NCBI GenBank assembly: GCA_977020255.1
Contig: CDROCS010000253.1
Span: forward strand, 434,001-498,000
DNA length: 64,000 bases
Source: Obrimoposthia wandeli
Lineage: Eukaryota
Direction: 5' to 3'
Positions within the stretch are counted from its first letter, which is position 1. The number at the start of each line of letters is the position of its first letter. The translations under genes and the position numbers were made by a program. Positions 4,457 through 43,808 of this stretch are shown one piece after another. The notes beneath the pieces were generated by a model. It saw only the letters and a program-made list of their open reading frames with translations. It was not told the origin of the DNA and did no database searches.

Positions 4457-5257
4457 TTAGGTAATACTTTCTACTGTTTTCCAACCAACAGCCAATCCTG
4501 TATCATACCGCAAATCGATGTAATCAACTGCCTGATTTTGCTGTTTTTCCGTAATTATTTTTGCCTTCAACTGCGCTTTAATTATTGGATAAACATCCAT
4601 AAAACGTTGAATACGTTCAACTCGCTCTTCACGACCTAAATTTAAGGTCACACCATCATCAAGCGTTAACTGCCAAGAAAAACGTTCACTCAATACTAAT
4701 TCATCAATTTTTAGTGCTTTAAAGTCAAGTAATGCATTGAGATCTCTGTAATTTTTCAATGCCATTAACTCAGTTCCCTCTGGGCCAAAGAAGTTTGGTA
4801 GGTAATGATTAATGCGTTCAATATCCGCCTGAAAAACCTGCCCAAGTTGATTGATCAGAAAATTGCCATTCCATAATGCCACCGGATTTTGGTCAACCAC
4901 ATATATTTTTAATTCATTTGGCCATTGCTTTCTTACCGCTACCGAGTAAACCCAAGGCAGTGTGAGTACATAACTTTGCACTTCATTAACATCAACTTGA
5001 AAGAAATTTCCCATGTCAACCTGATCAATAGCATTGATAATATCGCTACGTTGACTATAAGGCATTTCCCCTGAAATAACGATTGAAGTGACTGGTGCAC
5101 TTTCTTGACCAATAAAGTGCTGAGCAAGCCACCAACTAATAGTTATTAGACTAAATAGCACAACAAGAAAAAACACTAAACCCAAGCCAAAAGACAAAAC
5201 GTTGTTTTGGCCTGGCTGAGCTGCTGTTTTACTATTGCCTTGCTGTTTATTTGTCAT
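4457..5257 (-). CDS. ftsQ: Cell division protein FtsQ
   Basis: Single TM, POTRA domain (LPWVYSVAVRKQWP), YIDLRYDTGLAVGW; lies between ddl and ftsA. Confidence 0.95.
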   Translation of the reverse strand: MTNKQQGNSKTAAQPGQNNVLSFGLGLVFFLVVLFSLITISWWLAQHFIGQESAPVTSIVISGEMPYSQRSDIINAIDQVDMGNFFQVDVNEVQSYVLTLPWVYSVAVRKQWPNELKIYVVDQNPVALWNGNFLINQLGQVFQADIERINHYLPNFFGPEGTELMALKNYRDLNALLDFKALKIDELVLSERFSWQLTLDDGVTLNLGREERVERIQRFMDVYPIIKAQLKAKIITEKQQNQAVDYIDLRYDTGLAVGWKTVESIT

Positions 5258-5266
5258 TTTAATTTC

Positions 5267-6232
5267 TTATTTTTTGACACTAAGCTGTAAAATTTGAGTC
5301 ACTAACTCGCTAAAATTCAAACCAAATACCTTTGCTGCTTTTGGTACAAGTGACGTTTCCGTCATCCCTGGTACCGTATTTACTTCTAATATCTGCCATT
5401 CGCCAATACTATTACGCATGATATCAACACGCCCCCAGCCCTGAGCACCTGTTGCATTAAAGGCTTTAACAGACAAAGCTTTTATTTCATTTTCATCACG
5501 TTCACTTAACCCGCATGGACAGTGGTATTGTGTTGTTGTCGATTGATACTTTGCTTCATAATCATAAAATTCATGGGGTGTTTCCATGTGAATAGCAGGT
5601 AAAGCCTTATCGCCTAAAATGGTGACGGTATATTCCGGACCGTCAATCCAAGCTTCAAGTAATACTTGCGTGTCAAAACAAAAAGCTTCAATCAATGCAG
5701 TACGCAATTGCTCAATGGTTTGTGCCTGTGCCATACCAATACTTGAACCTTCATTGGCAGGTTTTACCATTACTCTACCGCCTAAATCAGCAAGAATACT
5801 TGCTAACGGTAACTTTTCAAAGTCAGCTTTATGAACAACGGTAAAAGGTGCTGTTGGTATGTCACACGCTTTAAATATTTGTTTACTTCTTACCTTATCC
5901 ATCGAGAGCGAGGACCCTAAAACATTCGAGCCGGTATAGGGGATAGCTAAATACTCAAGTGCCCCTTGCAAACAACCATCTTCACCACCTCTACCATGTA
6001 GCGCAATGAAAACTCGATCTATCTTTTTAGTTAATAAATCAGTTAATGGCACTGTTTTAGTATCAATTAAAACAACAGTAAAACCCGCTTCTTCTAAACC
6101 TTTCGCAATCGCTTTCCCTGAATTGAGGGAGACTTCTCGTTCTGCTGAGTTACCGCCATAAAGCACGGCTATTTTCTCTTGCTTGAGCAATGCAAGTGAA
6201 CTCTCCATTGAAGACTCCAAAGTACTGCCCAT
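5267..6232 (-). CDS. ddl: D-alanine--D-alanine ligase
   Basis: [34 protein letters not shown] motifs. Confidence 0.97.
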
Positions 6233-7761
6233 TACTTCTTACCTTTAAGTGCAGATTGAGCTATAGCCTTAACATGCAATAAACTATGCTCGGCTAGGTT
6301 GCGAGCCACTGTGCCAATACTTCCAGCTCCTTGCGTAATGACCATGTCACTATCTTGCAACTGAGTCGCTAATAATTGCGCTAACTTATCTACATCACTG
6401 ACATAAATAGGTTCTATTTGGCCACGTTGACGAATTGATCGCGCTAAGCTTTTGCTATCTGCTGACGAGATTGGTGTTTCTCCTGCCGCATAAACATCAA
6501 GCAAAAATAAACAGTCAACTTCTGAAAGTACTTCAACAAAGTCTTCATATAAATCGCGGGTACGAGAATAACGATGCGGTTGAAAAACCATGACCAAACG
6601 TTTATCTGGCCAACCTTGACGCATTGCTAAAATAGTCGCTTTCACTTCACTCGGATGATGACCATAATCGTCAACCAACACCATATTACCGGCATCGGTT
6701 GTTAACGTAGCTAACTGCTCAAAACGTCTACCAATGCCTTCAAACTCAATTAATGCCTGACAAATCGCTTCATCATTCACACCCTCGTCTTTAGCAACGG
6801 CCACGCCAGCCAAAGCATTTAATACATTATGCTGACCAGGCAAGTTTACGCTCATATTTAGCGGTTCCTGCCCTGCTACCTCTACGGTGAAATGACTAAC
6901 AGCACCATTTTGCTGGTAATTCACCGCTCTTACATCAGCATCTTCAGAGAAACCATAAGTGATCACTTGACGGCTAATGCGTGGTAATAATTCACGCACG
7001 ACGGGGTTATCAATACAAACAACCGCTAAACCATAAAAGGGCAAGTTATGTAAAAACTCTATGTAAGTATCTTTAAGCTTTTCAAAATCACCTTGATAAG
7101 TTTCCATATGATCTTCATCAATATTGGTTATTACCGCAACCATAGGCTGTAAGTGTAAAAATGATGCATCACTTTCATCAGCCTCTGCAACCAAATAGCG
7201 ACTGCTACCTAATCTTGCATTAGTACCCGCGCTATTAAGTAAGCCACCAATCACAAACGTTGGATCTAATTTACCCTGTGCAAAAATACTGGCAATCAAA
7301 CTCGTTGTCGTTGTTTTTCCGTGCGTACCTGCAATAGCAATTCCGTGACGAAAGCGCATTAACTCAGCCAACATCTCTGCTCGCCTCACGACAGGAATAC
7401 GTAATTCTTTTGCCTTAACTAGTTCAGGGTTTTCACTATTTATCGCAGTAGATACCACTATTACGCTGGCTTGAACCACGTTTTCTGCTTGATGACCAAT
7501 GACAATGGTCGCACCTAGCGCTCTTAAGCGTTTAACCACTTGGTTTTCACCAATATCTGAACCTGAAATTTGATAACCTTCATTAAGCAATACCTCAGCA
7601 ATACCGCCCATACCAGCACCACCTATACCAACAAAATGGATACGTTTTACCCGACGCATTTCAGGTACCTGAGTTGCAGTTGCGTTGGTACTCTTACTGG
7701 CATTAGAAATTGAATCAGTACTTGAGCCAGTATTATTACTTGAGTGAGTTTGCTTAATCAT
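6232..7761 (-). CDS. murC: UDP-N-acetylmuramate--L-alanine ligase
   Basis: [32 protein letters not shown]; carries a Ser/Thr/Asn-rich N-terminal extension. Confidence 0.98.
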
Positions 7762-12853: not shown

Positions 12854-14466
12854 TAAGCCATACCTTCTTTACTTTGATTATCACTAGCTTGAGTTTTACT
12901 AGCTTTGTTTTTACTCGCAACACTTTCTTGACTAATACTTTGTTCTTGATTCATAACTTGCTGGGCATTCATTTTTTCAAACCAATCAATAATTTCTGTC
13001 ACTACATACTCCATATGTGCACTTCGAGAGCCTTTAACTAAAATAGCAATATCTTGCTGACCAACAGACAGCTGTTGACTCAACATGGTAAATAAATGAG
13101 TTATCAAATCAGCTCTTTGATTGAAATGCTGACTTTGCTCATTTTGGTGATTGTCTTTGGCAAACGCATCACTGGCACTTTGACTTAACACGCCTAACGA
13201 CAATAGGGTATTTAACTGTAAGTGCTTAGCAAATTCGCCAACTTCTTGATGATAACTACGCGCTTCACTGCCTAGTTCACCCATATCACCTAGAATAAGT
13301 AATTGCTTCCCTGGATAATTTGATAATAATTGCGCTGCCGCTTTTGCTGACTCAAGATTAGCGTTATAGCTATCATCAATCAGTTTGATGTTGCAGCCCG
13401 TTTTTGTGTCTTTTAATTGATGTAAATTCAGTCGGCCTTTTACTGGCTGCATTTGGGCTAAACCTAACTGAATGTCCTCAAGGCTGGCGCCAAACTCTAG
13501 CGCAATACAAGCAGCAGCAACCGCATTACAAACATTATGCTTGCCAGGTACGGTTAAAGTGACGTCACAATTGCCCTTTTCGCTTTGCAGAGTGAAACTT
13601 GCGCAGCCATTGTCGTCTAAGCTGACATTTTCGCTATAACAATTGGCTTTACTAGTACCAGTACTAAAACAAGAAAAAGTACGAACCGTTTTATCCGTTA
13701 ACCGCCATTGCCATTTACTGGTGTACTTAGTGTCTTGGTTGTATAGGGCAACACCATTTTCACCAAGACCTGAAAATATTTCGCCTTTAGCACGGGCTAC
13801 TCCACATAAATCACCAAAGCCTTCTAAATGTGCGGCGGCAATATTATTAATTACGGCAACGTCTGGCTGAGCTAATGCGGTGGTATAAGCAATTTCACCC
13901 ATGTGATTAGCGCCCATTTCAATCACAGCAAAATCATGGCTGTTATCTAAACGAAGTAATGTTAAAGGCACGCCAATATCATTATTAAAATTACCGTTCG
14001 TTGCTAAGACTTTGCCTAAACGAGACAAAATAGCGGCAACCATTTCTTTAACTGTTGTTTTACCACTACTACCGGTAATGCCCACCGTTTTAGGGGCAAG
14101 CTCTTTTTTAACAAAAGCGGCAATTTTCCCTAGAGCAATACGCGTATCGCTAACAATTAATTGTGTGGTATCAGTTACTTCATTCAAGTGATGATCAACG
14201 ATGAGTAATTGACAGCCTTGCTTGATAACTTGCTTTGCAAAACGGTGGCCATCGAAATTAGGCCCTTTAAGTGCAAGAAAGGCAGTGCTCTTGTCAGAAT
14301 TTTCAATGATAGCGCGACTATCAATAACTAAATCATCAATGACTAATTCATCAATAAACAAGTCATCGGAAGCTAATTCATCGAGACTGAACACAGCCGG
14401 TTTTTCTGCAATAATGAGTTCACCGTCAGTCACTTTTGCTAAAGTAGCCACTGAAAGCGTAATCAT
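12853..14466 (-). CDS. murF: UDP-MurNAc-tripeptide--D-Ala-D-Ala ligase
   Basis: [35 protein letters not shown]. Its start overlaps the murE stop (ATGA). Confidence 0.96.
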
Positions 14467-16079
14467 AACTTTGCCTCATTAGGCAATGTTTTTTTTGAAG
14501 CTAAGCCTGCATGCTTTTGATAAAAATTTGTCACAACTAAGCGTTCGTTATAAGCTAATTTCTGCGTACCAATGACTGCGCCATGGTTATCATGCTTAGC
14601 AACAATGACGTAATCTTCATGGCCTTTACCTGCCAACAAGACGATATCACCAGCTTGTGCTTTATTCAGTGTCTTCAATACGGCTTGTTCTCTTGCTAAA
14701 ATAATGGTTATTTTCTCGGCATCCGGATTGGTAAAACCAGCAATAATATCATTGGCTATCAACTGGGCATCTTCACTACGCGGGTTATCATTGGTAACTA
14801 TCAAATAATCCGCATGTTTTTCTGCCGCTTGCGCCATTAAGGGTCTTTTGCCTTTATCTCTATCGCCGCCACAGCCAAAGACAACATAAAGCTCACCTGA
14901 ACAATGTTGACGACAGGCTTGCAGTGCTTTTTCCAACGCATCGGGAGTGTGGGCATAATCAACCACGGCCGTTGCTAAGTTCTCAGCACTTGTTGCTTCC
15001 ATTCGTCCTGCGATAGCACTCACTTGGCTAACTAAATTAGGAAGCTCGCTTAATGGTATGCCTTGAATAAGCAGCACACTGATGGCCGCCAATAAATTAT
15101 CAATATTAAAATCGCCCAACAATGGACTGGTAATGTCTATATCGCCTAAATGACTCGCTAAGGTAAAAGAAACACCGTGACTATGACGATTAATAGCTTT
15201 AGCGGTTACAAAATACTTGTAGGCACCTATGTGATTTTCACGACCATATAACCAAAGGGGTTGCTGCTCTGGCCAGTTTTTCAGCCATTGTTTTGTTTGT
15301 TTATCATCAAAGTTCACTACGGCAACTTGCTTACTATCTGCGCTAAAAATCTGCTTTTTAGCCTTGGCATAACTTGCCATAGAACCATGGTAATCAAGAT
15401 GGTCACGGCTTAAATTGGTAAACAGTGCTATATCAAATAAATCTGCTTGCACACGTTTTTGTGATAAAGCATGTGAAGACACTTCCATCGCTACGTAGCT
15501 AAATTTGCCATGGACAGAGTGCTCATCATTAAAACAGTTAAATAATTGATGTAACTCACAAGCACCAGGAGTGGTATTTTCTATGGGATGTAACTTATCG
15601 ATACTACCCGCACCATTAGTACCAATAACAGCACAAGGTTTATGGTAAGCACTAAGCATCTGAGCTAACAATTGACTGGTGGTGGTTTTACCATTGGTAC
15701 CGGTAATACCTACTATAGTCATATTATCTTGCGGCGCTTGATAGTAGTTTTTTGTTAAGGTAAACAAATGCTGATTAAGTTGATAAAACTTAACAATAGC
15801 GACCTTATTTTCGCTTGACGAAAAAGCAACCTCTCCATGATCAGTAATCTTCTCACATTCAGCAAGCACTAATTTAGCACCTTGGCTAATGGCTTGTTCA
15901 ATGTATTGGCGACCATCTTGATCATGCCCCATAATGGCGCAGAAAATATCACCCTCGACAATGCCTCGACTATCATTGTGAAGATCACCACAACAGCCCA
16001 TTAAATTAATGGTTTTAGGTAAATCAATGGAAAATTGAGTTAAACAAGTCACTATATTTTGTGTAGTAGGTTTAGGCAT
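14463..16079 (-). CDS. murE: UDP-MurNAc-dipeptide--meso-diaminopimelate ligase
   Basis: GITGTNGKTT, MEVSSH, DHLDYH, DYAHTPDA. The DNPR motif is the established meso-DAP specificity signature. Confidence 0.97.
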   Translation of the reverse strand: MPKPTTQNIVTCLTQFSIDLPKTINLMGCCGDLHNDSRGIVEGDIFCAIMGHDQDGRQYIEQAISQGAKLVLAECEKITDHGEVAFSSSENKVAIVKFYQLNQHLFTLTKNYYQAPQDNMTIVGITGTNGKTTTSQLLAQMLSAYHKPCAVIGTNGAGSIDKLHPIENTTPGACELHQLFNCFNDEHSVHGKFSYVAMEVSSHALSQKRVQADLFDIALFTNLSRDHLDYHGSMASYAKAKKQIFSADSKQVAVVNFDDKQTKQWLKNWPEQQPLWLYGRENHIGAYKYFVTAKAINRHSHGVSFTLASHLGDIDITSPLLGDFNIDNLLAAISVLLIQGIPLSELPNLVSQVSAIAGRMEATSAENLATAVVDYAHTPDALEKALQACRQHCSGELYVVFGCGGDRDKGKRPLMAQAAEKHADYLIVTNDNPRSEDAQLIANDIIAGFTNPDAEKITIILAREQAVLKTLNKAQAGDIVLLAGKGHEDYVIVAKHDNHGAVIGTQKLAYNERLVVTNFYQKHAGLASKKTLPNEAKL

Positions 16080-17847
16080 TAGGCTCTCCTACTGCTATCT
16101 TGCGCTCTGGACGCGAGTGTTTGCTGTACTTACTGGCTGTTTGTAATTTTTGTGCATCTGGAGCAATATTAAGAATACGCAAAGCACCTTTCATCACCCG
16201 TGAAAATACCGGTGCGGCTATATCACCACCATAATAAAGATCGCCACCCGGTTCATTTATGACCACAACGACAACAATTTCAGGGTTAGAAATTGGCGCC
16301 ATACCTGCAAAAAAACCAACATAGTCATTACCATAACCACCAGCAACGGCTTTAATTGAAGTGCCTGTTTTACCACCTACTCGATAACCATCAATTTTCG
16401 CTTTTGGTACATGTTGATCCACAACAGCTTCTAACATATGCGTAATAGCTAGACTGTTCTTAGCAGAGAAAATTCTTTCCTGATCTTCTGGAACAGCCGC
16501 TTTATCACTGCTTTTAACAATCGTTAATTTACGTTTTATGCCACCATTGGCAAGGGCCATATAAAAACGTGTTAATTGTGCCGGGGTAATGGCTAGTCCA
16601 GCGCCCCAAGAGAGGGTCGCTAATTCAAACTTCGACCAACGACTTCTATCATGCATCATGCCCGAACTTTCACCAACTAAGTTAGTACCCGTATCTTCTG
16701 CAAAACCTGCATCAAAAAACTTGGTTAACAGATAATCTTTTGGCACTGATAGTGCCAATTTTGTAGTGCCCATATTGGAAGAGTGAACCAAAATATCTTC
16801 AATGGATAGCTTGCCACGATTAATAGGGTCACTAACTCGACGTCCGCCTAAACGCATCCATCCGGGGCTAGTATTTATCACCGTATTTTCTTTAACAGAG
16901 CCAAACTCTAATGCGGCCATTGCTGTCAATGGTTTCATTGTTGAGCCGGGTTCATACACATCAGTAATAGCGCGATTTCTAAAACGATGAATTGCCGTAT
17001 TACGGCGATTATTTGGGTTATACGATGGGCTATTGGTCATTGCCAATATCTCACCAGTATGAACATTTGCGACCACGATTGAACCTGAAGTAGCTTTAAA
17101 TGCTTGCACAGCACCTTTTAGCTCTTTATAAGCAATGGCTTGAATACGTTGGTCGATACTTAAGGTAATATCTTGTGCTTGCTCAGGCTCTTCCACTGAA
17201 ATTATTTCAATTTTACGACCTTTGGCATCTTTTCTAAAACGTTTTGCACCACCCGTACCCGTAAGTAATTCATCATACATACGCTCGATGCCTTCAATGC
17301 CTTTATCATCAACATTGGTAAAACCAATAAGGTGAGCACTAATTTCCCCAGTAGGATAAAAGCGCTTCGATTCTTTACGCAGGTGTATTCCGGGGATTTT
17401 TAATTTTTTGATGTAATTAGCCATGGCTGGCGATATTTTACGCTCTAGATAAATAAAACGTTTACGGGGATTTTTAACTACGCGAGCGATAAGTGTATTT
17501 ATATCTTGATCAAGTACGTCTGCAAGCGCCTGCCAATGCTTAGTCATCGCGAGAGCATTATTGTCCATAATAATTTTAGGATCGGCCCAAACGGTTTCTA
17601 CAGGCACACTAATAGCGAGTTCGGCGCCGTTGCGATCAACAATAGAACCACGTTGCACAGTATTAGCAGCAACGCGTAAAGAGCGTAAGTCGCCTTGTTT
17701 TTTCAGCATTTCTGGTTCAATAATTTGGATGTAGGCGGTTCGCGCCATCAAACTGATATAAATAAGAGCAACAACAGCCAGCACGAGATAATAACGCCAT
17801 GGAGCGGTATTTAGTGGATTATTGTTTTTGGCTGCTTTTTTATTCAC
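16072..17847 (-). CDS. ftsI: Septal transpeptidase PBP3
   Basis: EPGSTMK (SxxK), SSN (SxN), KTG motifs; N-terminal TM; GTG start. Confidence 0.97.
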   Translation of the reverse strand: MNKKAAKNNNPLNTAPWRYYLVLAVVALIYISLMARTAYIQIIEPEMLKKQGDLRSLRVAANTVQRGSIVDRNGAELAISVPVETVWADPKIIMDNNALAMTKHWQALADVLDQDINTLIARVVKNPRKRFIYLERKISPAMANYIKKLKIPGIHLRKESKRFYPTGEISAHLIGFTNVDDKGIEGIERMYDELLTGTGGAKRFRKDAKGRKIEIISVEEPEQAQDITLSIDQRIQAIAYKELKGAVQAFKATSGSIVVANVHTGEILAMTNSPSYNPNNRRNTAIHRFRNRAITDVYEPGSTMKPLTAMAALEFGSVKENTVINTSPGWMRLGGRRVSDPINRGKLSIEDILVHSSNMGTTKLALSVPKDYLLTKFFDAGFAEDTGTNLVGESSGMMHDRSRWSKFELATLSWGAGLAITPAQLTRFYMALANGGIKRKLTIVKSSDKAAVPEDQERIFSAKNSLAITHMLEAVVDQHVPKAKIDGYRVGGKTGTSIKAVAGGYGNDYVGFFAGMAPISNPEIVVVVVINEPGGDLYYGGDIAAPVFSRVMKGALRILNIAPDAQKLQTASKYSKHSRPERKIAVGEPNA

Positions 17848-38358: not shown

Positions 38359-39624
38359 ATGGCACCTTTAACCCACTCCCCATTAAATAAATCTAGTGCT
38401 AGAGTCCTAAAACGAGCATTATTTCTATTGTCCATAATGCTTGTAACATTTCCTATTTATAGTGAAAGCTTTACCGCAAAGCGAACAGGACAAGGTTTTA
38501 CCGGCTTAACACAAGACTTTACTTCATCGTTGAGCAACCCCGCCTTACTGACTAAGTTCCGTAATGATAATGACGTCTTCTTTTCTTTAAACATAGGCAT
38601 CATGGCATCTGATAAATATAATGTTATTGATAACGCTGAGGACATTAGTGACAATCTTGATACATTGGCCGACGACATTAACGGCACGCAACTTCAAAAT
38701 ATTCAATCACCAGATCAAGTAAAAAACTATAGCGATGATTTGAATCAGCAGGTCGACACTATAATTACTGATTTTGAAAAAATAGATGGGCAAGTGGTAA
38801 AAGTGCGTAATGGCTTGAACTTACAAATTATCATCCCTAATCAATTTTTGAGTTTTGGTCTTTTTACCAACCAATATAGTCGTATTGGTGGGGTAATGGA
38901 TTACAACGAAAACGATGAAGAAATATTAAATGATGCCATTTTATCAGGTGACCTAGATTTAAAGGATCTAGAATCAGCAACTACAGCCGTCGGTTACTCC
39001 ATTGCTGAGGCAGGTTTTATGGCTGGTTATCCTGCCATTACACACACTAACTATGATCTAAGCATCGGTGCCAAGTTAAAATATCAACGTATTGATCTTT
39101 ATTATAACCGCGTACAAATTAGTGACTTCGATGATGACGACTTCGAGATTACCAATGATGAAAATATCACAAAAAAAAGTGGCACTAATATTGACTTAGG
39201 AATATATATAAACTGGGGCTCAGAGCGTCAATGGCACGCGGCATTGGTCACAAATAATTTAATAAAACAAACCGTGCATCATGTTGAGAAAAATCTTATT
39301 TTTACTTTAGAAAACAGTACTAGCTTTGGTTTAAGCTATCAAAACAGTTGGGTAAGTTTAGCAACCGATATCGATTTAACCGATCGGGAACAATTCGCTT
39401 CTATAGAGCCATCCAGATATGCTGGCGTGGGGGCTGAGTTTCGTTTCTATGAGCATATTCAATTTCGTTTAGGTTATCGCACTGACTTAAATAATGTTGA
39501 TGATGATATTTATACTGCTGGTATTGGTATTTCACCCTGGGATGTTTTCGCCGTTGATATTGCTGCCTTTACGGGAGATAGCGATACTATAGGGGCTGCA
39601 TTGCAACTCAGTTTAAAAATATAG
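38359..39624 (+). CDS. TraF-family (PF13729-like) outer-membrane beta-barrel protein
   Basis: Signal peptide, SSLSNPALL, beta-strand-rich C-half, terminal LQLSLKI. Confidence 0.65.
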   Translation: MAPLTHSPLNKSSARVLKRALFLLSIMLVTFPIYSESFTAKRTGQGFTGLTQDFTSSLSNPALLTKFRNDNDVFFSLNIGIMASDKYNVIDNAEDISDNLDTLADDINGTQLQNIQSPDQVKNYSDDLNQQVDTIITDFEKIDGQVVKVRNGLNLQIIIPNQFLSFGLFTNQYSRIGGVMDYNENDEEILNDAILSGDLDLKDLESATTAVGYSIAEAGFMAGYPAITHTNYDLSIGAKLKYQRIDLYYNRVQISDFDDDDFEITNDENITKKSGTNIDLGIYINWGSERQWHAALVTNNLIKQTVHHVEKNLIFTLENSTSFGLSYQNSWVSLATDIDLTDREQFASIEPSRYAGVGAEFRFYEHIQFRLGYRTDLNNVDDDIYTAGIGISPWDVFAVDIAAFTGDSDTIGAALQLSLKI

Positions 39625-39679
39625 TCACCCTTACTGCTAAGTTACGCTACTTCTGTATATTCTTTGCATAACAGATAAT

Positions 39680-39718
39680 AAAAAAGCAGTTATTGATAAT
39701 ATCAATAACTGCTTTTTT
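39680..39718. terminator. Bidirectional terminator ending the lysine operon
   Basis: aaaaaagcagttattgat-aat-atcaataactgctttttt. Confidence 0.88.
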
Positions 39719-39740
39719 AATGTTATATGGTTAGTAATAA

Positions 39741-40874
39741 TTAAAGTTTAAAGTAATTACAAAAAACCTTATATAACTCAGTTCCCTGATTAACACTCGC
39801 AGAAGCGAAGTGCAAAATAGGAATAACCTCTTGCTCAAGTGACACATAATGCAACGCCTCACCATCACCGTAATTATCCATACGAAGGATTCGAGCTAAC
39901 GGCTCTCCGGCTGCTAAAGGCTTACCGAATTCCCCAAGGTAATCAACCATGCCACCCATCGGTGAATATAAGGCTTTATAATCCTTCAAGTAACAAGCGT
40001 ATCGGGTCATTTTCTGAGGCTGATACTGTTTATTATCGATAACACCCTGAGCGTGTAAATAAGACAAAATACCCAGTGCATCTTGCTTAGCTACCTCTAG
40101 GTCAATTTGTTCTTGGGAGCCAAGCTCAACGGTAAAGCTCTCTTTCTTAAAAGCGCCTTTACCCATAGTAAAGTTTCGACCTAAGTCTTGATAGGCTTCT
40201 TGCAAGCTCCACCATGGACAAAAGGTTGCTTCATCCATGGCGCCATCAAAGCCATTCTGAATAAAGATGGTATGCTCAATATCAAAAAACTCCGCGCTGG
40301 CTTTGGCATACTCAGGACAATATAAGTGCTTACTTGAAATAGGACCTGTGTGTAAGTCCAAAACTATATCAGCCTGATATGCTAGACGTTGTAACTGGTA
40401 GGCAATACGTTGCCCCGTAGTGATCCCCCAAATATTGTGTTCTAATCGTTGATCTATTTCAGTAATCAAAAGTTGCTGGAATTTATCTGCTATTTCTTCT
40501 TCACTCGCATCAAGGTATTGCTGAGCAAAAGGCCCAATAACACTTTGGTCAAAGTGATACATTCGATTCCAGTTTTCCCCAGTAATGGGGTCAAATCGTC
40601 CTAAAGTATACTCACCATTTTTATGATTACAGGCTACCGGATTAGCATACGGCACTAAGGTAATATTGCCTTGTAAATTACAATGCTGTAGCAATTCAAG
40701 CAGCTGAAAAATAACCGCGTTACCTTGTACTTCAGCGCCATGCATATTGGCCTGAATATAAACATTGGGACCAGAATTACTTTCAGATTTAAAGGCATAC
40801 ACCGGCACAGTTAACTTAGCACCACTCGCCATTTCGCCAACTGACATAACTTCTTTGGTAAAACTATTCATCAC
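39741..40874 (-). CDS. M14 / AstE-AspA-family zinc desuccinylase/deacylase
   Basis: HGAE (HxxE), ENWNR, VLDLHTG; biotinyl-like C-terminal domain. Confidence 0.85.
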   Translation of the reverse strand: MMNSFTKEVMSVGEMASGAKLTVPVYAFKSESNSGPNVYIQANMHGAEVQGNAVIFQLLELLQHCNLQGNITLVPYANPVACNHKNGEYTLGRFDPITGENWNRMYHFDQSVIGPFAQQYLDASEEEIADKFQQLLITEIDQRLEHNIWGITTGQRIAYQLQRLAYQADIVLDLHTGPISSKHLYCPEYAKASAEFFDIEHTIFIQNGFDGAMDEATFCPWWSLQEAYQDLGRNFTMGKGAFKKESFTVELGSQEQIDLEVAKQDALGILSYLHAQGVIDNKQYQPQKMTRYACYLKDYKALYSPMGGMVDYLGEFGKPLAAGEPLARILRMDNYGDGEALHYVSLEQEVIPILHFASASVNQGTELYKVFCNYFKL

Positions 40875-40897
40875 AACTCCTCACTCCTAAACATAAG

Positions 40898-42148
40898 CTA
40901 AGCCAAATAAGATGAAGCAGGCTGAGCTGCTCTGATTTGAGTTAGCGTACCATTTTGGTAAACATATTCAGCCGCTAATTCATGACATAAGAAAAACGGC
41001 ATGCTTTCAGTAAAGCCATAAGCGCCGCAATAACCAAACACTAATTGTTCACCAACAGCAGTGTCTTTAGGTAACTGTAAATGCCCTAACTTATCCATAC
41101 TAGTGCATAAAGGGCCATGAATATCAAAAGCTTGCATAGAGTCTTTTTCAGCTATAAACCCTTCTCGTAGTATCTGTACCGGAAAAGGTTGTTCGGTTAT
41201 CGCTGGGCGTAATAAGTGATTGATACCCGCTGCCAAAACTAGCTGTTCTTGGCCATAATTCATTTTTCTATCAACGACAGGTACGACATAATAGCCATAC
41301 TCTGCAACCGCAAAACGTCCTAATTCAAGCCATAATTCTTTGACACCAGCTTTTTCTTTGATAATGGCCAAGTCTTCGATAACTTGAGACCAAGACAATA
41401 CTTGTCCTTCACCTAAGTAATCAATACCTAAACCACCGCCTAAATCGAGTACATCAAGTGTCATACCAATGCTTTTAGCTAAATTGGTCAAGGGCGTTAT
41501 CATTTGAGACCATAATGAAAACATTTTTTCATTACTGAGCATGTTGCCCCATTGAAAAATATGCAAGCCACAAAGATCCAACGCTGGATAGTCATCTACG
41601 TGGATATTTTGCCACTCAGACACTGATAAACCAAAAGGCGTTAAGCTATTGCCACCCAGTGGATTTTTCTCGCCTTCATGCCATTGCAGCTGAACTCTTA
41701 GAAGTACTTTCGGTCTGGCATTGCTACAGGAAGATTGTTCCTGCTCAAGAACCGCTTCATTTAACCAGTTCAGTTGATTTAAACTCTCAACCACAAAAGT
41801 ATTAACGCCCAGCTTAACAAATGCAGTAAGCTGTTTTTTTGATTTAGCGGGTCCAGTATTTAATACTCGACTGGGATCGATACCTTGCGCTAAAACTTGA
41901 GCTAATTCACCACTACTAGCAACATCAAAGTTAAAACCTTCACTATCTAATGTTTGAATTACTTTTGATAATGGATTCGCTTTAACAGCAAACCATAATT
42001 TAATGACGTCTTGCTGCTGCAAAGCGGCTAAATGTACTTTAAGTGCATCGAGTTGATAAACAAAATAGCCTTGTTCATCTTCTGGTGATTCATGGGTAAC
42101 TAAGGCATTTTCAATACTGGTGTCAAACCAAGTGGATTTAGTCATCAT
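40898..42148 (-). CDS. PLP fold-III amino-acid decarboxylase, divergent LysA-like
   Basis: FAVKANP, DLGGGLG, ELGRF, GPLC, GAYG. It has HIFQWGN where canonical LysA has HIGSQ. Confidence 0.85.
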   Translation of the reverse strand: MMTKSTWFDTSIENALVTHESPEDEQGYFVYQLDALKVHLAALQQQDVIKLWFAVKANPLSKVIQTLDSEGFNFDVASSGELAQVLAQGIDPSRVLNTGPAKSKKQLTAFVKLGVNTFVVESLNQLNWLNEAVLEQEQSSCSNARPKVLLRVQLQWHEGEKNPLGGNSLTPFGLSVSEWQNIHVDDYPALDLCGLHIFQWGNMLSNEKMFSLWSQMITPLTNLAKSIGMTLDVLDLGGGLGIDYLGEGQVLSWSQVIEDLAIIKEKAGVKELWLELGRFAVAEYGYYVVPVVDRKMNYGQEQLVLAAGINHLLRPAITEQPFPVQILREGFIAEKDSMQAFDIHGPLCTSMDKLGHLQLPKDTAVGEQLVFGYCGAYGFTESMPFFLCHELAAEYVYQNGTLTQIRAAQPASSYLA

Positions 42149-42303
42149 AATTTTCTTTAATCTTAATAACTCAATCGAGTTAGTGAATTAGTTATTCAGC
42201 TTTAAGTTGTATGATTCAAGCTAAAGAAAAAAGCACGGAGTTGATGAATATCAATGAGTACTTTTGACGCATAGATTGGACCATACAGCGACAAGATGAT
42301 TAA

Positions 42304-43053
42304 TTAACGTAGAATTGATTCTAGTTCTAGTGAAGCATCGCTTTGTTCATCGCGATATTTAACGATAAGCGCACATGCCATACTTAGACCTTGCTCTTGA
42401 GCCCATTCACCTTTTACAGGACGGGTACCAGGTACAACAACTGCACGTTCTGGAATTTCAGCACCTTTTTCTCGCATAACTTGATTAACACAATCATAAA
42501 CAGGTACTGATTTTGAAAGAGATACGCCTGGTGCTAATACCGCACCTTTTTTAACAACAATGCCTTCAACTACAACGACACCAGCACTTAAAAAGGCACC
42601 ATCTTCAATGATTACAGGACTAGCGCCTATTGGCTCTAATACGCCACCAATTTGAACGGCTGCTGAAATATGTACATTTTTACCAACTTGTGCACATGAA
42701 CCAATCAAGGCATGGCTATCAACCATAGTGCCACTATCAACAAAAGCGCCAACATTGATATAAGCTGGTGGCATGATGATAACACCTTCAGCGACGTAAG
42801 CACCTGCGCGTACTGATGAACCACCAGGTACTAAACGAACACCATCTTTTGGTGTAAATTGACGAGCTGGTAAGTTGTGTTTATCAACAAAACCTTGGTA
42901 ATTATCATCAAAAGCAACGTTTTTACCTGCTTTAAATGCAGCTAAAATACCTTGTTTCACTTCAATGTTGGCATGCCAGTTACCGGCATCATCTTGGTTT
43001 GCCGCTCGTAAACTACCTGATTCTAACTGTGCTAATACATCTTGCCAGTCCAT
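42304..43053 (-). CDS. dapD: Tetrahydrodipicolinate N-succinyltransferase, short form
   Basis: RLVPGGSSVR, MPPAYINVGAFVD, GSCAQVGKNVHIS, GGVLEP hexapeptide repeats. Confidence 0.88.
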   Translation of the reverse strand: MDWQDVLAQLESGSLRAANQDDAGNWHANIEVKQGILAAFKAGKNVAFDDNYQGFVDKHNLPARQFTPKDGVRLVPGGSSVRAGAYVAEGVIIMPPAYINVGAFVDSGTMVDSHALIGSCAQVGKNVHISAAVQIGGVLEPIGASPVIIEDGAFLSAGVVVVEGIVVKKGAVLAPGVSLSKSVPVYDCVNQVMREKGAEIPERAVVVPGTRPVKGEWAQEQGLSMACALIVKYRDEQSDASLELESILR

Positions 43054-43229
43054 TTATTACTCCGCTTATCTGATAAAAAGTTTATAGAAAAATAATGAGT
43101 ACCCGTGTTATTAAAGGTATGCATAAACACACTTGATTAATAAAACTAAATACATTGCGCGGAGGACTGGGCATTGACAGAGAAGAGCATAATATCAGCT
43201 GAGCTGGTATTTGGGCTAATATGCAAAGA

Positions 43230-43640
43230 CCAGAAGCTCCCCACTTAATACCCGTTCCACTTGAAGATGCATGATTCAGCTGGAATTAGAAATGCCTTTA
43301 GGCAAGGCATTGATTGAAGAGAATAGTTATTCTATTGTCTAAATCAATAACGCAGTATAAAGCGTTTCTAAACCAGTTGTTGGTTACATTTCTTAGGGAA
43401 TGACCCTTAATAAAAAATGTGCCTTGATTATGAATCGCTCAGACTTCCTGACGAGCATTTCAAGTGATAAAATATAAAGTGACAAGTATTCAGCCCACAA
43501 CCGATAAACAGCTAATCAAATAGTCATTTATCTCGGCGTTAATCCCCCTCATTACTATCTACAGATTTTGATATCTGTTTTTGAATTGTTCAAGACAATA
43601 CAAAACAATAGTAATTACCTGGTTAACGCTCCTCTTCTGG
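43230..43640 (-). ncRNA. Lysine riboswitch, interrupted by a 230-nt insertion
   Basis: The 5' end is CCAGAAGAGGAGCGUUAACCAGGUA. P1 CCAGAAG (43640-34) pairs with CUUCUGG (43236-30). P2 attactat/atagtaat and P3 are present, the loops AUCAAA/UUUGAU are complementary, and the 3' end is AAGUGGGGAGCUUCUGG. It lies upstream of dap/lys genes. Confidence 0.85.
43247..43476. mobile_element. ERIC-like MITE, decayed copy 2 (inverted relative to copy 1)
   Basis: 43263-43376 aligns ungapped to the reverse complement of copy 1, with 8 mismatches in 114 nt (manual count). The rest matches the other module, with a 35-40 nt internal loss and eroded TIRs. Confidence 0.9.
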
Positions 43641-43808
43641 CCCTATTAAAATTTACTGGTAAGTTACTCAACCGGTAAATTGAAATTAGGGACTCTACTA
43701 TTTAAGCATTTTTTTTACCTAGGTACAATTAACTTCCGGCAAATAACCCTATTCCCTTATAACTATTTACCGTAGAATATAACCATAATTTTTATCATTT
43801 ATTGCCCT

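What the first reader, a model, noticed from the sequence alone, without database searches (positions are those of the whole stretch)
39741..43640. Lysine-riboswitch operon dapD + divergent decarboxylase + M14 desuccinylase: a possible DapE/DapF-independent lysine route
Seen: a lysine riboswitch leads three co-oriented genes that end at one terminator. They are a short DapD, a fold-III PLP decarboxylase with HIFQWGN in place of the LysA HIGSQ motif, and an AstE/AspA-type zinc deacylase (HGAE, NWNR, DLH) starting 23 nt after the decarboxylase stop. Known: the canonical succinylase path uses DapD, an aminotransferase, DapE (M20 family), DapF and LysA. AstE-type M14 enzymes remove succinyl from N-alpha-succinyl amino acids, and other fold-III decarboxylases act on L-centres. 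Inference A: the M14 protein is a non-orthologous DapE. Inference B: the decarboxylase acts first on N-succinyl-L,L-DAP to give N-alpha-succinyl-lysine, which the M14 enzyme then deacylates. Route B would skip the epimerase and separate lysine supply from the meso-DAP that MurE (DNPR motif, this window) needs. An aminotransferase would have to come from elsewhere.
Basis: partly seen in the sequence, partly recalled or inferred. Interest (0 to 1): 0.82.

Follow-up and report, generated by a model that had tools for sequence, protein, structure and literature searches.

The report
Riboswitch-controlled variant lysine synthesis module
A Colwellia chromosome carries, behind a lysine-sensing RNA switch, the last three genes of a widespread but unstudied lysine operon, in which an unusual decarboxylase and a zinc desuccinylase of a different family appear to replace the textbook LysA and DapE.

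Summary
A lysine riboswitch leads dapD2, a LysA-like decarboxylase ("dec") and an AstE-type M14 deacylase ("M14a"), and the operon ends at one hairpin terminator. One correction applies. The aptamer really ends near 43228 and carries a 247-nt segment with a high-copy repeat in its P4-P5 region.

The host is a Colwellia on a 4.68-Mb contig. That contig also has canonical dapD, dapE, dapF and lysA, so the trio is an auxiliary set here.

The trio is the trimmed end of a conserved riboswitch operon, asd-lysC-dapB-dapA-dapD2-dec-M14a. The operon occurs in Bdellovibrionota and in Francisella and its relatives, and shortened forms occur in Colwelliaceae and other Enterobacterales (GTDB sense).

- **dec** forms its own clade outside LysA. 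It is the only LysA-family gene found in at least nine genomes of the Francisella order, so it most likely makes lysine.
- **M14a** occurs in genomes where no DapE was found.
- **M14a without dec** persists as riboswitch-lysC-M14a in DapE-positive genomes, so it probably also acts on N-succinyl-DAP.

Route B (decarboxylation before desuccinylation) fits the changes in dec's distal substrate pocket and the existence of a second M14 paralog next to dapF. It is not proven (about 0.4). Independence from DapF is not shown. I found no paper that describes this module's chemistry.

The parts
43228..43644 (-). Lysine riboswitch aptamer (P1 to P1), interrupted in the P4-P5 region
   Evidence: Rfam RF00168 at 49.1 bits for 43443-43644. 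Close relatives score 67-103 bits. The alignment places the true 3' halves of P5 and P1 at 43246-43228. The fold closes P1 and P5 around the insert.
43249..43495 (.). 247-nt segment that replaces 75 nt of the relatives' aptamer; contains a high-copy MITE-like repeat (about 43249-43451)
   Evidence: Alignment gap against L017, L019 and L020. A joint 43248->43496 with 75 other letters appears in contigs of three runs. Depth over 43212-43485 is roughly 10-1000 times that of the flanks in four runs.
43054..43227 (-). Leader and probable expression platform. A C-rich stretch (43159-43170) can pair with the GGAG Shine-Dalgarno (43060-43063) and the start-codon region
   Evidence: Sequence. The minimum-energy fold pairs these segments, but the overall z-score is only -0.8, so this is an inference.
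42304..43053 (-). dapD2: short (249 aa) tetrahydrodipicolinate N-succinyltransferase paralog
   Evidence: NF008808 at 297 bits (cut-off 204); TIGR00965 at 190 bits (cut-off 375). About 165 bits to solved DapD structures, against 86 bits to the acetyl-type DapH. It is the only DapD hit in Francisella, Oceanisphaera and G031.
40898..42148 (-). dec: fold-III PLP decarboxylase of a distinct LysA-like clade (HxFQWGN, LCT, NH..RP..T, GAYGFTESMPFFLCH)
   Evidence: It is the only LysA-family hit in at least 9 genomes of the Francisella order.
39741..40874 (-). M14a: AstE/AspA-family zinc deacylase, the probable desuccinylase
   Evidence: PF24827 at 101.6 bits. 414-417 bits to PDB 3FMC and 3LWU. H45, E48, N103, R104, H175 and E250 are invariant in 35 relatives.
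39679..39719 (.). Bidirectional intrinsic terminator shared with the convergent gene 38359-39624
   Evidence: 19-bp stem with T-runs on both strands.

Best explanation
The trio is the trimmed 3' end of an old, horizontally spread, lysine-riboswitch-controlled lysine operon. Its full form is asd-lysC-dapB-dapA-dapD2-dec-M14a.

**Proposed steps**
- DapD2 succinylates tetrahydrodipicolinate.
- An unlinked aminotransferase makes N-succinyl-L,L-DAP.
- dec is the lysine-forming decarboxylase of the operon. It belongs to a separate clade of LysA-like enzymes.
- M14a is an AstE-family zinc desuccinylase that does the work of DapE.

**Most likely order (inferred, not shown)**
dec removes the carboxyl group at the free L-centre of N-succinyl-L,L-DAP. 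M14a then releases lysine from N2-succinyl-lysine. M14a probably also hydrolyses N-succinyl-DAP.

**Role in this Colwellia**
The module is an extra branch that is switched on when lysine is scarce. It runs beside a complete canonical pathway that supplies meso-DAP for the cell wall. Regulation is probably translational, by sequestering the ribosome-binding site.

**Confidence by step**
- Lysine-biosynthesis module: about 0.9.
- dec makes lysine: about 0.85-0.9.
- M14a is the desuccinylase: about 0.75.
- Decarboxylation comes before desuccinylation: about 0.4.
For: **Regulation.** The riboswitch was found upstream in 11 of 13 Colwelliaceae loci. It was also found in Francisella, in G731 and in four Bdellovibrionota operons.

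**Operon context.** Five divergent dec representatives (39-43% identity) all sit in asd-lysC-dapB-dapA-dapD2-dec-M14 operons with overlapping stops and starts. Shortened forms were also seen.

**dec as a family.** It forms a 100/100 clade on a long stem, outside the LysA clade. The search against 50%-identity cluster representatives returned only about 25 representatives of this family.

**dec as the lysine-forming step.** dec is the sole LysA-family hit at E<=1e-40 in G709, G727-G731, G733, G734 and G764, and in G031.

**Co-occurrence of dec and M14a.**
- 4 of 4 dec-positive genomes among 401 gammaproteobacteria also have M14a.
- 20 of 22 dec-positive genomes among 301 Enterobacterales have M14a, always adjacent.
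- In the Francisella order, canonical DapE was found only in two genomes that have neither dec nor M14a.

**For the order of steps.**
- The family-wide replacements are CE(S/T) to CT, RPxxY to RPxx(T/S/I) and ND to NH. PLP Lys56, His196, ELGR, Arg314, Cys348 and Tyr377 are kept.
- The nearest solved relatives are SbnH and BtrK, which decarboxylate the L-centre of substrates with an acylated far end (227 and 226 bits). The best DAP decarboxylase scores 204 bits (PMC7857480).
- A second paralog, M14b, lies next to dapF in 12 genomes and is translationally coupled to it in the one locus examined. This fits two desuccinylases serving two branches.
- dapD2 and dec stay adjacent even where M14a is unlinked or not found.

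**Expression.** Metatranscriptome contigs of relatives bridge riboswitch to dapD2 and dec to M14. This is weak evidence.
Against: - No enzyme assay or genetic test exists.
- M14a is kept after loss of dapD2-dec in 28 of 48 M14a-positive Enterobacterales. It is often kept as riboswitch-lysC-M14a, and five of five such genomes checked have DapE. Two Francisella genomes lack both dec and DapD2 but keep M14a. M14a therefore has a role that does not need dec, most simply on N-succinyl-DAP. That makes free DAP available to dec.
- Seven of the nine dec-only genomes keep DapF, so meso-DAP is available there and canonical chemistry would work.
- The CT motif is shared with a wider group of uncharacterised decarboxylases, some of which pass the lysA cut-off.
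- The score margin of SbnH and BtrK over DAP decarboxylases is small.
- The roles I assign to the LysA Glu and Tyr come from my memory of the UniProt/HAMAP LysA features, not from a test here.
- Oceanisphaera and G501 have dapD2-dec but no M14a was found.
Confidence: 0.42

Rival explanations
1. Isozyme set with textbook chemistry. DapD2 is a DapD, M14a is a non-orthologous N-succinyl-L,L-DAP desuccinylase (a DapE analog), and dec is a divergent meso-DAP decarboxylase (a LysA analog). DapF and an aminotransferase act from elsewhere. The module only adds lysine-repressible capacity.
For: - It is the simplest reading. Sources name dec "diaminopimelate decarboxylase" (PMC5584792).
- M14a works without dec in DapE-positive genomes and stays under the riboswitch with lysC.
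- Seven of nine dec-only genomes keep DapF.
- The Arg that binds the distal carboxylate in LysA is kept in dec.
Against: - dec and canonical LysA coexist in 2-Mb Francisella genomes and across Colwelliaceae. This argues against plain redundancy.
- Two LysA substrate-contact residues (the Glu of CES and the Tyr of RPxxY) are replaced family-wide.
- dec lies outside the LysA clade on a long stem and scores below the lysA cut-off.
- Genomes with DapF carry a second desuccinylase-like gene beside dapF in addition to M14a.
- dapD2 and dec are always adjacent although their steps would be three reactions apart.
Confidence: 0.3
2. dec decarboxylates free L,L-DAP. M14a acts first as a DapE analog, and dec then acts on an L-centre. 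Lysine is made without the epimerase, but with no succinyl-lysine intermediate.
For: - dapF is absent from every operon seen.
- No DapF was found in most Francisella that carry dec.
- The nearest solved relatives of dec are L-centre decarboxylases.
- M14a's dec-independent role fits a DAP-forming enzyme.
Against: - The far end of L,L-DAP is the same free L-amino acid as in meso-DAP. The LysA residues for it should then be kept, but they are replaced.
- DapF loss is not tied to dec.
Confidence: 0.12
3. The module makes a product other than lysine. Examples are a succinylated diamine or a precursor for a secondary metabolite. The riboswitch would only couple it to lysine status.
For: The nearest solved relatives of dec work in siderophore and antibiotic pathways. 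A sister-clade decarboxylase is coupled to an aminotransferase.
Against: - The module is always embedded in asd-lysC-dapB-dapA operons behind a lysine riboswitch.
- dec is the only LysA-family gene in many genomes.
- No synthetase or exporter genes lie nearby.
Confidence: 0.05
4. dec is a PLP-dependent DAP epimerase that replaces DapF.
For: Francisella adeliensis has dec and LysA, but no DapF was found.
Against: - At least nine genomes have dec but no other LysA-family gene, so nothing else could make lysine.
- DapF is also missing in Francisella genomes without dec.
- dec and DapF coexist in many genomes.
- To my knowledge, every characterised member of this fold-III subfamily is a decarboxylase.
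Confidence: 0.02

Closest known systems
Succinylase branch of the diaminopimelate pathway (DapD, DapC/ArgD, DapE, DapF, LysA)
   Same: The start is the same: tetrahydrodipicolinate is succinylated by a hexapeptide-repeat DapD. A succinyl protecting group is later removed, and a fold-III PLP decarboxylase makes lysine. As in many bacteria, the aminotransferase is not in the operon.
   Different: - DapD2 lacks about 30 N-terminal residues and scores at the low end of the general DapD model.
- The desuccinylase belongs to the M14 AstE family, not the M20 DapE family.
- The decarboxylase lies outside the LysA clade and has changed substrate-contact residues.
- No dapF was seen in any operon.
- The whole set sits under a lysine riboswitch.
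SbnH, BtrK and FigC/FslC: LysA-related decarboxylases that act on the L-centre of amino acids with an acylated or conjugated far end (PDB 6KNH, 2J66/7RU7, 7KH2; PMC7857480)
   Same: SbnH and BtrK are the best-scoring solved relatives of the dec profile (227 and 226 bits). They share Cys-Thr in place of the LysA Cys-Glu. In FigC, loss of the acidic residue next to the catalytic Cys accompanies an acylated substrate.
   Different: dec has its own invariant HxFQWGN and GAYGFTESMPFFLCH motifs and keeps the LysA-type Arg of RPxx. FigC itself scores only 117 bits. dec sits in lysine operons, not siderophore or antibiotic clusters. Its substrate is unknown.
AstE (succinylglutamate desuccinylase), DoeB and aspartoacylase (Pfam AstE_AspA_cat)
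   Same: M14a has the same catalytic domain, and the motif positions stay invariant (H45, E48, H175, E250, N103, R104). I read these as zinc ligands, catalytic Glu and an Asn-Arg carboxylate clamp from memory of aspartoacylase. These enzymes remove an N-alpha-acyl group from an L-amino acid.
   Different: No equivalog model is met. DoeB scores 35.7 bits against a cut-off of 402.7. Solved succinylglutamate desuccinylases 8EIN and 8EIP score only about 80 bits. The context is lysine biosynthesis, not arginine or ectoine breakdown. The nearest structures (3FMC, 3LWU) are labelled only as putative succinylglutamate desuccinylase/aspartoacylase.
Alternative DapE of Bacteroidota (Echvi_1427 family, GapMind 2026, PMC13759103)
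   Same: It is a precedent that DapE can be replaced by an unrelated or distant amidohydrolase in organisms that keep DapD.
   Different: That enzyme is a dipeptidase-like amidohydrolase with distant homology to N-acetyl-DAP deacetylase, and it was confirmed by complementation. M14a is a different fold and is untested.
Lysine-riboswitch operons listed in PMC5584792 (PLoS One 2017)
   Same: The paper already lists riboswitch-dapD in Colwellia psychrerythraea, dapA-dapD-lysA-hypothetical1-hypothetical2 in Pseudoalteromonas haloplanktis, and lysC-dapB-dapA-dapD-lysA in Bacteriovorax marinus.
   Different: It treats the genes as ordinary dapD and lysA. It calls the Colwellia dapD independently regulated and leaves the M14 gene as "hypothetical". 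It makes no statement about chemistry or about DapE replacement.

Membership tests
Lysine riboswitch (Rfam RF00168) | Covariance-model score at or above the gathering threshold (30 bits) | tested here: met
   49.1 bits, E 7.5e-10. Orthologous leaders score 67-103 bits.
Lysine riboswitch (Rfam RF00168) | Five-helix junction closed by P1, with intact P4 and P5 | tested here: inconclusive
   The Rfam alignment mispairs P4, P5 and P1. The true 3' strands lie 200 nt further on. The fold closes P1 and P5 around the insert. Whether lysine still binds with the 247-nt segment present is untested.
Lysine riboswitch (Rfam RF00168) | Lies in the 5' leader of a lysine synthesis or transport gene, with an expression platform | tested here: met
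   It lies upstream of dapD2, and of lysC, asd or dapA in other taxa. A helix that sequesters the Shine-Dalgarno site is predicted (weak).
DapD, tetrahydrodipicolinate N-succinyltransferase (NCBIfam NF008808 / TIGR00965) | Score above the curated equivalog cut-off | tested here: inconclusive
   NF008808 is met (297 bits, cut-off 204). TIGR00965 is not met (190 bits, cut-off 375.4). Canonical DapDs score 368-398 bits on NF008808.
DapD, tetrahydrodipicolinate N-succinyltransferase (NCBIfam NF008808 / TIGR00965) | Serves as the cell's DapD | tested here: met
   It is the only DapD-like hit in Francisella adeliensis, G070, G031 and Oceanisphaera ostreae. This is indirect genomic evidence only.
LysA, meso-DAP decarboxylase (TIGR01048) | Score above the curated cut-off (297.9 bits) | tested here: not met
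   170.4 bits. The canonical LysA on the same contig scores 482 bits.
LysA, meso-DAP decarboxylase (TIGR01048) | Catalytic core: PLP lysine, His of HxGSQ, E-P-G-R, catalytic Cys, Tyr of GAY | tested here: met
   K56, H196, E275/R278, C348 and Y377 are invariant or nearly so in 17 family members.
LysA, meso-DAP decarboxylase (TIGR01048) | Residues that hold the distal L-amino-acid end (Glu after the catalytic Cys; Tyr of RPxxY). This feature list is from memory of the UniProt/HAMAP LysA rule. | tested here: not met
   The Glu is Thr349 and is invariant. The Tyr is Thr, Ser or Ile. The Asp of the ND motif is His311. All five canonical LysAs aligned here keep CE(T/S)GD and RPxxY.
LysA, meso-DAP decarboxylase (TIGR01048) | Falls inside the LysA clade | tested here: not met
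   The LysA clade (100/98) is separated from the dec clade (100/100, stem 1.15) by a 99/99 split.
Acyl-amino-acid L-decarboxylases (SbnH/BtrK/FigC group) | Closest solved relatives, and loss of the acidic residue next to the catalytic Cys | tested here: met
   SbnH 227 bits and BtrK 226 bits, against 204 bits for the best DAP decarboxylase. The LCT motif is shared. The margin is small.
Acyl-amino-acid L-decarboxylases (SbnH/BtrK/FigC group) | Acts on an L-centre of a substrate with an acylated far end | not testable with these tools
   This needs enzyme assays with N-succinyl-L,L-DAP, L,L-DAP and meso-DAP.
AstE/AspA zinc deacylases (Pfam PF24827, MEROPS M14) | Catalytic-domain match with zinc ligands (H, E, H), catalytic Glu and the Asn-Arg carboxylate clamp | tested here: met
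   PF24827 at 101.6 bits. H45, E48, H175, E250, N103 and R104 are invariant in 35 sequences. The residue roles are from memory of aspartoacylase.
AstE, succinylglutamate desuccinylase proper | Equivalog-level similarity and an arginine succinyltransferase gene context | tested here: not met
   No AstE equivalog hit in NCBIfam. About 80 bits to solved succinylglutamate desuccinylases 8EIN and 8EIP. The context is lysine biosynthesis.
DapE (M20, TIGR01246) | Homology to the M20 desuccinylase | tested here: not met
   M14a is a different fold. The canonical DapE lies elsewhere on the contig (536 bits). M14a can be only a functional analog.

The most novel reading that the evidence does not exclude
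N-succinyl-L,L-DAP is a branch point. dec decarboxylates it to N2-succinyl-L-lysine, and M14a then releases lysine. This would be a lysine-only branch that never passes through free DAP. A separate desuccinylase (DapE, or M14b beside dapF) feeds meso-DAP to the cell wall. It would add a new intermediate and two new enzyme activities to lysine biosynthesis. It would also explain how a wall-essential pathway can sit under a lysine riboswitch.
Probability: 0.4. Interest if true: 0.85.

Novelty: new variant of a known kind. Interest (0 to 1): 0.7.

Why it matters
Lysine and DAP synthesis is a textbook pathway and an antibacterial target.

- **A conserved, unstudied terminal module.** It occurs in predatory Bdellovibrionota, in Francisella and its relatives, and in many marine gammaproteobacteria. 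It contains a new LysA-like decarboxylase family and an AstE-family desuccinylase.
- **Filling annotation gaps.** In the Francisella order searched here, canonical DapE was found in only 2 of 65 genomes. No canonical DapD was found in the two Francisella genomes checked. These genes are therefore the only candidates found for those steps.
- **A function for orphan structures.** It suggests a role for two structural-genomics entries (3FMC, 3LWU).
- **If decarboxylation comes first.** It would show a new way to separate lysine supply from cell-wall DAP supply.
- **Easy to test.** Everything can be checked with E. coli auxotroph complementation and simple enzyme assays.

Tried and rejected
- **dec as a DAP epimerase.** Rejected. 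At least nine genomes have dec but no other LysA-family gene.
- **Loss of DapF as evidence for a DapF bypass.** Rejected. Francisella genomes lack DapF with or without dec.
- **NF008808 as a marker for the short DapD2 type.** Rejected. It is a general DapD model that canonical DapDs pass with higher scores.
- **M14a as a simple replacement for DapE everywhere.** Rejected. Five of five M14a-only Enterobacterales genomes checked have DapE.
- **Relatives of G031.** It is alone in its order in the collection.
- **Whole-genome checks in Bdellovibrionota.** Their loci are not in the genome collection, so the lysA, dapF and dapE status of Halobacteriovorax stays unknown.
- **Literature.** Seven searches found no paper on the module's chemistry. 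The 2003 Rodionov lysine-regulon paper is not held.
- **Sister-clade contexts.** The contigs were too short to inform, apart from one coupled aminotransferase.
- **Not run.** Structure prediction, fold search and complex prediction were not run. They would not separate the rival substrates without ligand modelling.
- **Read depth.** Depth over the genes could not be used to compare expression, because all the runs were contigs.

Full report
**1. What is in the window**

Four features lie on the minus strand, in this order:
- A lysine riboswitch (Rfam RF00168, 49.1 bits).
- A 249-aa DapD-like gene, 42304-43053.
- A 416-aa fold-III PLP decarboxylase, 40898-42148.
- A 377-aa AstE/AspA-type M14 deacylase, 39741-40874.

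A 19-bp hairpin terminator at 39719-39679 closes the set. HIFQWGN sits at residues 196-202 of the decarboxylase. HGAE, NWNR and DLH are in the M14 protein. The gap between the last two genes is 23 nt. A MurE with the DNPR motif lies at 14463-16088.

NCBIfam places the first protein above the cut-off of the general DapD model NF008808 (297 bits, cut-off 204). It is well below TIGR00965. The decarboxylase is far below the lysA cut-off (170 bits against 297.9). The M14 protein matches no equivalog model.

**2. Correction to the riboswitch**

The Rfam match ends at 43443 with mispaired P4, P5 and P1. I aligned the leader to three close Colwellia genomes. I also laid contigs of public runs on the region. 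Both show that window 43249-43495 replaces 75 nt in relatives. The real 3' strands of P5 and P1 lie at 43246-43228.

Depth over 43212-43485 is roughly 10 to 1000 times that of the flanks in four runs. The segment therefore holds a high-copy repeat. This agrees with an earlier scan note, s1-247193. The minimum-energy fold of 43215-43650 closes P1 and P5 around the insert (z -4.9), so the aptamer may still work. That is untested.

Downstream, a C-rich stretch (43159-43170) can pair with the ribosome-binding site and start-codon region. This fits translational control but is weak evidence.

**3. Host and canonical genes**

The closest relative is Colwellia demingiae, at 96% protein identity. The assembly is 1.35 Gb in 6912 contigs and holds many bacteria. 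The window lies on contig C253, which is 4.68 Mb. That contig also carries canonical genes:

| Gene | Score (bits) |
|---|---|
| lysA | 482 |
| dapD | 466 |
| dapE | 536 |
| dapF | 309 |

In this organism the trio therefore adds to a complete pathway and replaces nothing.

**4. Conservation**

The dapD2-dec-M14 order holds in about 78 of 80 related loci from Colwellia, Thalassotalea, Litorilituus and Thalassomonas. The riboswitch was found in 11 of 13 of these loci that I scanned, sometimes with dapA in front of dapD2.

A search of 1.84 billion cluster representatives shows that dec belongs to a small, sharply bounded family. About 25 representatives score 186 bits or more. Scores then drop to 176 bits or less, at 35% identity or below.

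Five divergent members (39-43% identical) all lie in asd-lysC-dapB-dapA-dapD2-dec-M14 operons with overlapping stops and starts. At least some are from Halobacteriovorax or Bacteriovoracaceae. Four of these loci have a lysine riboswitch in front.

Shortened forms make a series:

| Operon form (RS = riboswitch) | Where seen |
|---|---|
| RS-asd-lysC-dapB-dapA-dapD2-dec-M14a (in one locus asd is divergent) | Bdellovibrionota |
| RS-lysC-dapB-dapA-dapD2-dec-M14a | G731 |
| RS-lysC-dapB-dapA-dapD2-dec, M14a unlinked | Francisella adeliensis |
| lysC-dapA-dapD2-dec-M14a, no riboswitch found | G031 |
| RS-lysC-dapA-dapD2-dec-M14a | G472 |
| RS-dapA-dapD2-dec-M14a | G687, Thalassomonas |
| RS-dapD2-dec-M14a | Colwellia, this window |

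No operon contains dapF or a co-oriented aminotransferase.

A 2017 survey had already listed some of these operons. It treated the genes as ordinary dapD and lysA and called the M14 gene "hypothetical" (PMC5584792).

**5. What dec is**

In a maximum-likelihood tree, the dec family is a 100/100 clade on a long stem (1.15 changes per site). It sits inside a radiation of uncharacterised "LCT-type" decarboxylases. A 99/99 split separates it from the canonical LysA clade.

Residues kept in the family: the PLP lysine (K56), H196, E275/R278, R314, C348 and Y377.

Family-wide differences from LysA:

| LysA motif | dec family |
|---|---|
| HxGSQ | HxFQWGN |
| ND..RP | NH..RP |
| RPxxY | RPxx(T/S/I) |
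| CE(S/T)xD | CT(S/A/G)xD |

As I recall the UniProt/HAMAP LysA features, the Glu and the Tyr contact the distal L-amino-acid end of meso-DAP. I did not test this here.

A profile of the family scores highest against two solved structures:
- SbnH, at 227 bits.
- BtrK, at 226 bits.

Both decarboxylate the L-centre of substrates whose far end is acylated or conjugated. The best DAP decarboxylase scores 204 bits and the others score 128-181 bits. In FigC, a paper links loss of the acidic residue beside the catalytic Cys to an acylated substrate (PMC7857480). The score margin here is small.

**6. Gene-presence evidence**

*Gammaproteobacteria, 401 sampled.* dec occurs in 4 genomes, and all 4 also have an M14a homolog.

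*Enterobacterales (GTDB sense), 301 sampled.* dec occurs in 22 genomes. M14a is adjacent in 20 of them. One exception is cut by a contig end, and one has no M14a hit.

*The Francisella order, 65 genomes.*
- Twenty-seven genomes have a full-length dec.
- Nine of these (G709, G727-G731, G733, G734, G764) have dec as the only LysA-family hit at E<=1e-40. So does G031. dec must therefore be the lysine-forming decarboxylase there. This rules out the idea that it is an epimerase.
- Canonical DapE was found in only two genomes, both without dec and M14a.
- M14a was found in every genome with a full-length dec.
- DapD2 is the only DapD hit in the Francisella genomes examined.

These patterns make M14a the candidate desuccinylase and DapD2 a working DapD.

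**7. Evidence that cuts against a strict route B**

- M14a orthologs (46-74% identical) occur in 28 further Enterobacterales genomes that lack dec.
- In six of ten such genomes examined, the arrangement is riboswitch, then lysC, then M14a. Stop and start overlap in the locus checked.
- Five of five such genomes checked have canonical DapE.
- In the M14 tree, the lysC-linked genes form one clade nested among dec-linked ones. They therefore arose by loss of dapD2-dec while M14a was kept.
- PDB entries 3FMC and 3LWU match M14a at 414-417 bits.
- Two Francisella genomes without dec also lack DapD2 but keep M14a and LysA.

M14a thus has a use that does not depend on dec. The simplest such use is hydrolysis of N-succinyl-DAP. 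DapF is also missing from most Francisella with or without dec. Its absence therefore says nothing about dec.

**8. Evidence that favours route B**

- The pocket changes described in section 5.
- dapD2 and dec are always adjacent, even where M14a is unlinked or not found. This holds in Francisella, Oceanisphaera and G501.
- dec and canonical LysA coexist in 2-Mb Francisella genomes.
- A second AstE-family paralog, M14b (about 30% identical to M14a), lies directly next to dapF in 12 genomes of the Francisella order. Its start overlaps the dapF stop in the locus examined.

Two desuccinylases, one beside the epimerase and one beside dec, fit a branch at N-succinyl-L,L-DAP. One arm would lead to meso-DAP for the wall and the other to lysine. 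None of this is proof.

**9. Verdict**

| Statement | My estimate |
|---|---|
| The trio is a lysine-biosynthesis module | about 0.9 |
| dec is its lysine-forming decarboxylase | 0.85-0.9 |
| M14a is its desuccinylase | about 0.75 |
| Decarboxylation comes before desuccinylation (route B) | about 0.4 |
| Textbook chemistry by isozymes | about 0.3 |
| dec acts on free L,L-DAP | about 0.12 |
| Some other product | about 0.05 |

The first three rows are separate sub-claims. The last four are rival readings of dec's substrate.

Metatranscriptome contigs of related strains cover all three genes. They bridge riboswitch to dapD2 and dec to M14. This is compatible with expression but is no more than that.

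I found no paper on the chemistry of this module in seven searches.

Noticed in passing
window 43249-43495: A 247-nt segment inside the riboswitch replaces 75 nt of the relatives' aptamer. It includes a repeat whose depth in four public runs is roughly 10-1000 times that of the flanks, so it is MITE-like. Loose ends mark its borders near 43248 and 43451.
   Followed up: partly
L135 (G731:C1) 4536-6433; also G727-G735, G737, G753, G754: In 12 genomes of the Francisella order, a second AstE-family paralog (M14b, about 370 aa, about 30% identical to M14a) lies directly next to dapF. Its start overlaps the dapF stop in the locus examined. It is a candidate N-succinyl-DAP desuccinylase that feeds the epimerase.
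   Followed up: partly
L122-L125, L127, L130 (Enterobacterales genomes without dec): These loci carry a two-gene operon of lysine riboswitch, lysC (aspartokinase III) and M14a, in genomes that have canonical DapE. PDB 3FMC and 3LWU match M14a at 414-417 bits.
   Followed up: partly
G268 (Francisella adeliensis, complete), G070, G739, G747: No DapF, DapE or canonical DapD was found in most Francisella genomes. No Ddh was found in G268 or G070. LysA is present. G739 and G747 also lack DapD2 and dec but keep LysA and M14a. How these genomes obtain meso-DAP is unexplained.
   Followed up: partly
L089 / G002 (Oceanisphaera ostreae): This genome has dapD2-dec with no M14a, canonical DapD or canonical DapE found. 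It does have meso-DAP dehydrogenase (474 bits), LysA and DapF. No riboswitch was found at the gathering score.
   Followed up: partly
G000:C3797:232000-241999 (L119): A second copy of dapD2-dec-M14 lies on another contig of the same assembly. It comes from a different Colwelliaceae bacterium (M14 73% identical, nearest to Colwellia polaris).
   Followed up: partly
G000:C253:3690564-3691790 and 3984401-3985654 (L117, L118): Two further LysA-like paralogs lie on the same chromosome (249 and 231 bits on the lysA model). They group away from both LysA and dec. Their function is unknown.
   Followed up: no
G000 as a whole: The assembly is 1.35 Gb in 6912 contigs and holds more than 20 different canonical lysA genes. 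It is therefore a mixture of many bacterial genomes, possibly with a host.
   Followed up: no
L140 1-2357: A decarboxylase from the clade sister to dec (P0183) overlaps the stop of an upstream class I/II aminotransferase gene. This is an aminotransferase-decarboxylase pair of unknown pathway.
   Followed up: no
L121 (G526:C1:719000-729000): A Colwelliaceae-like genome keeps M14a (72% identical) next to the same rsmC-like methyltransferase gene as in the window. It has lost the riboswitch, dapD2 and dec.
   Followed up: partly
L111 / L112, 9203-10369 and 3822-4988: In one Bdellovibrionota-type operon, a class I/II aminotransferase gene converges on the 3' end of M14a and overlaps it. It is a possible candidate for the missing transaminase.
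   Followed up: no
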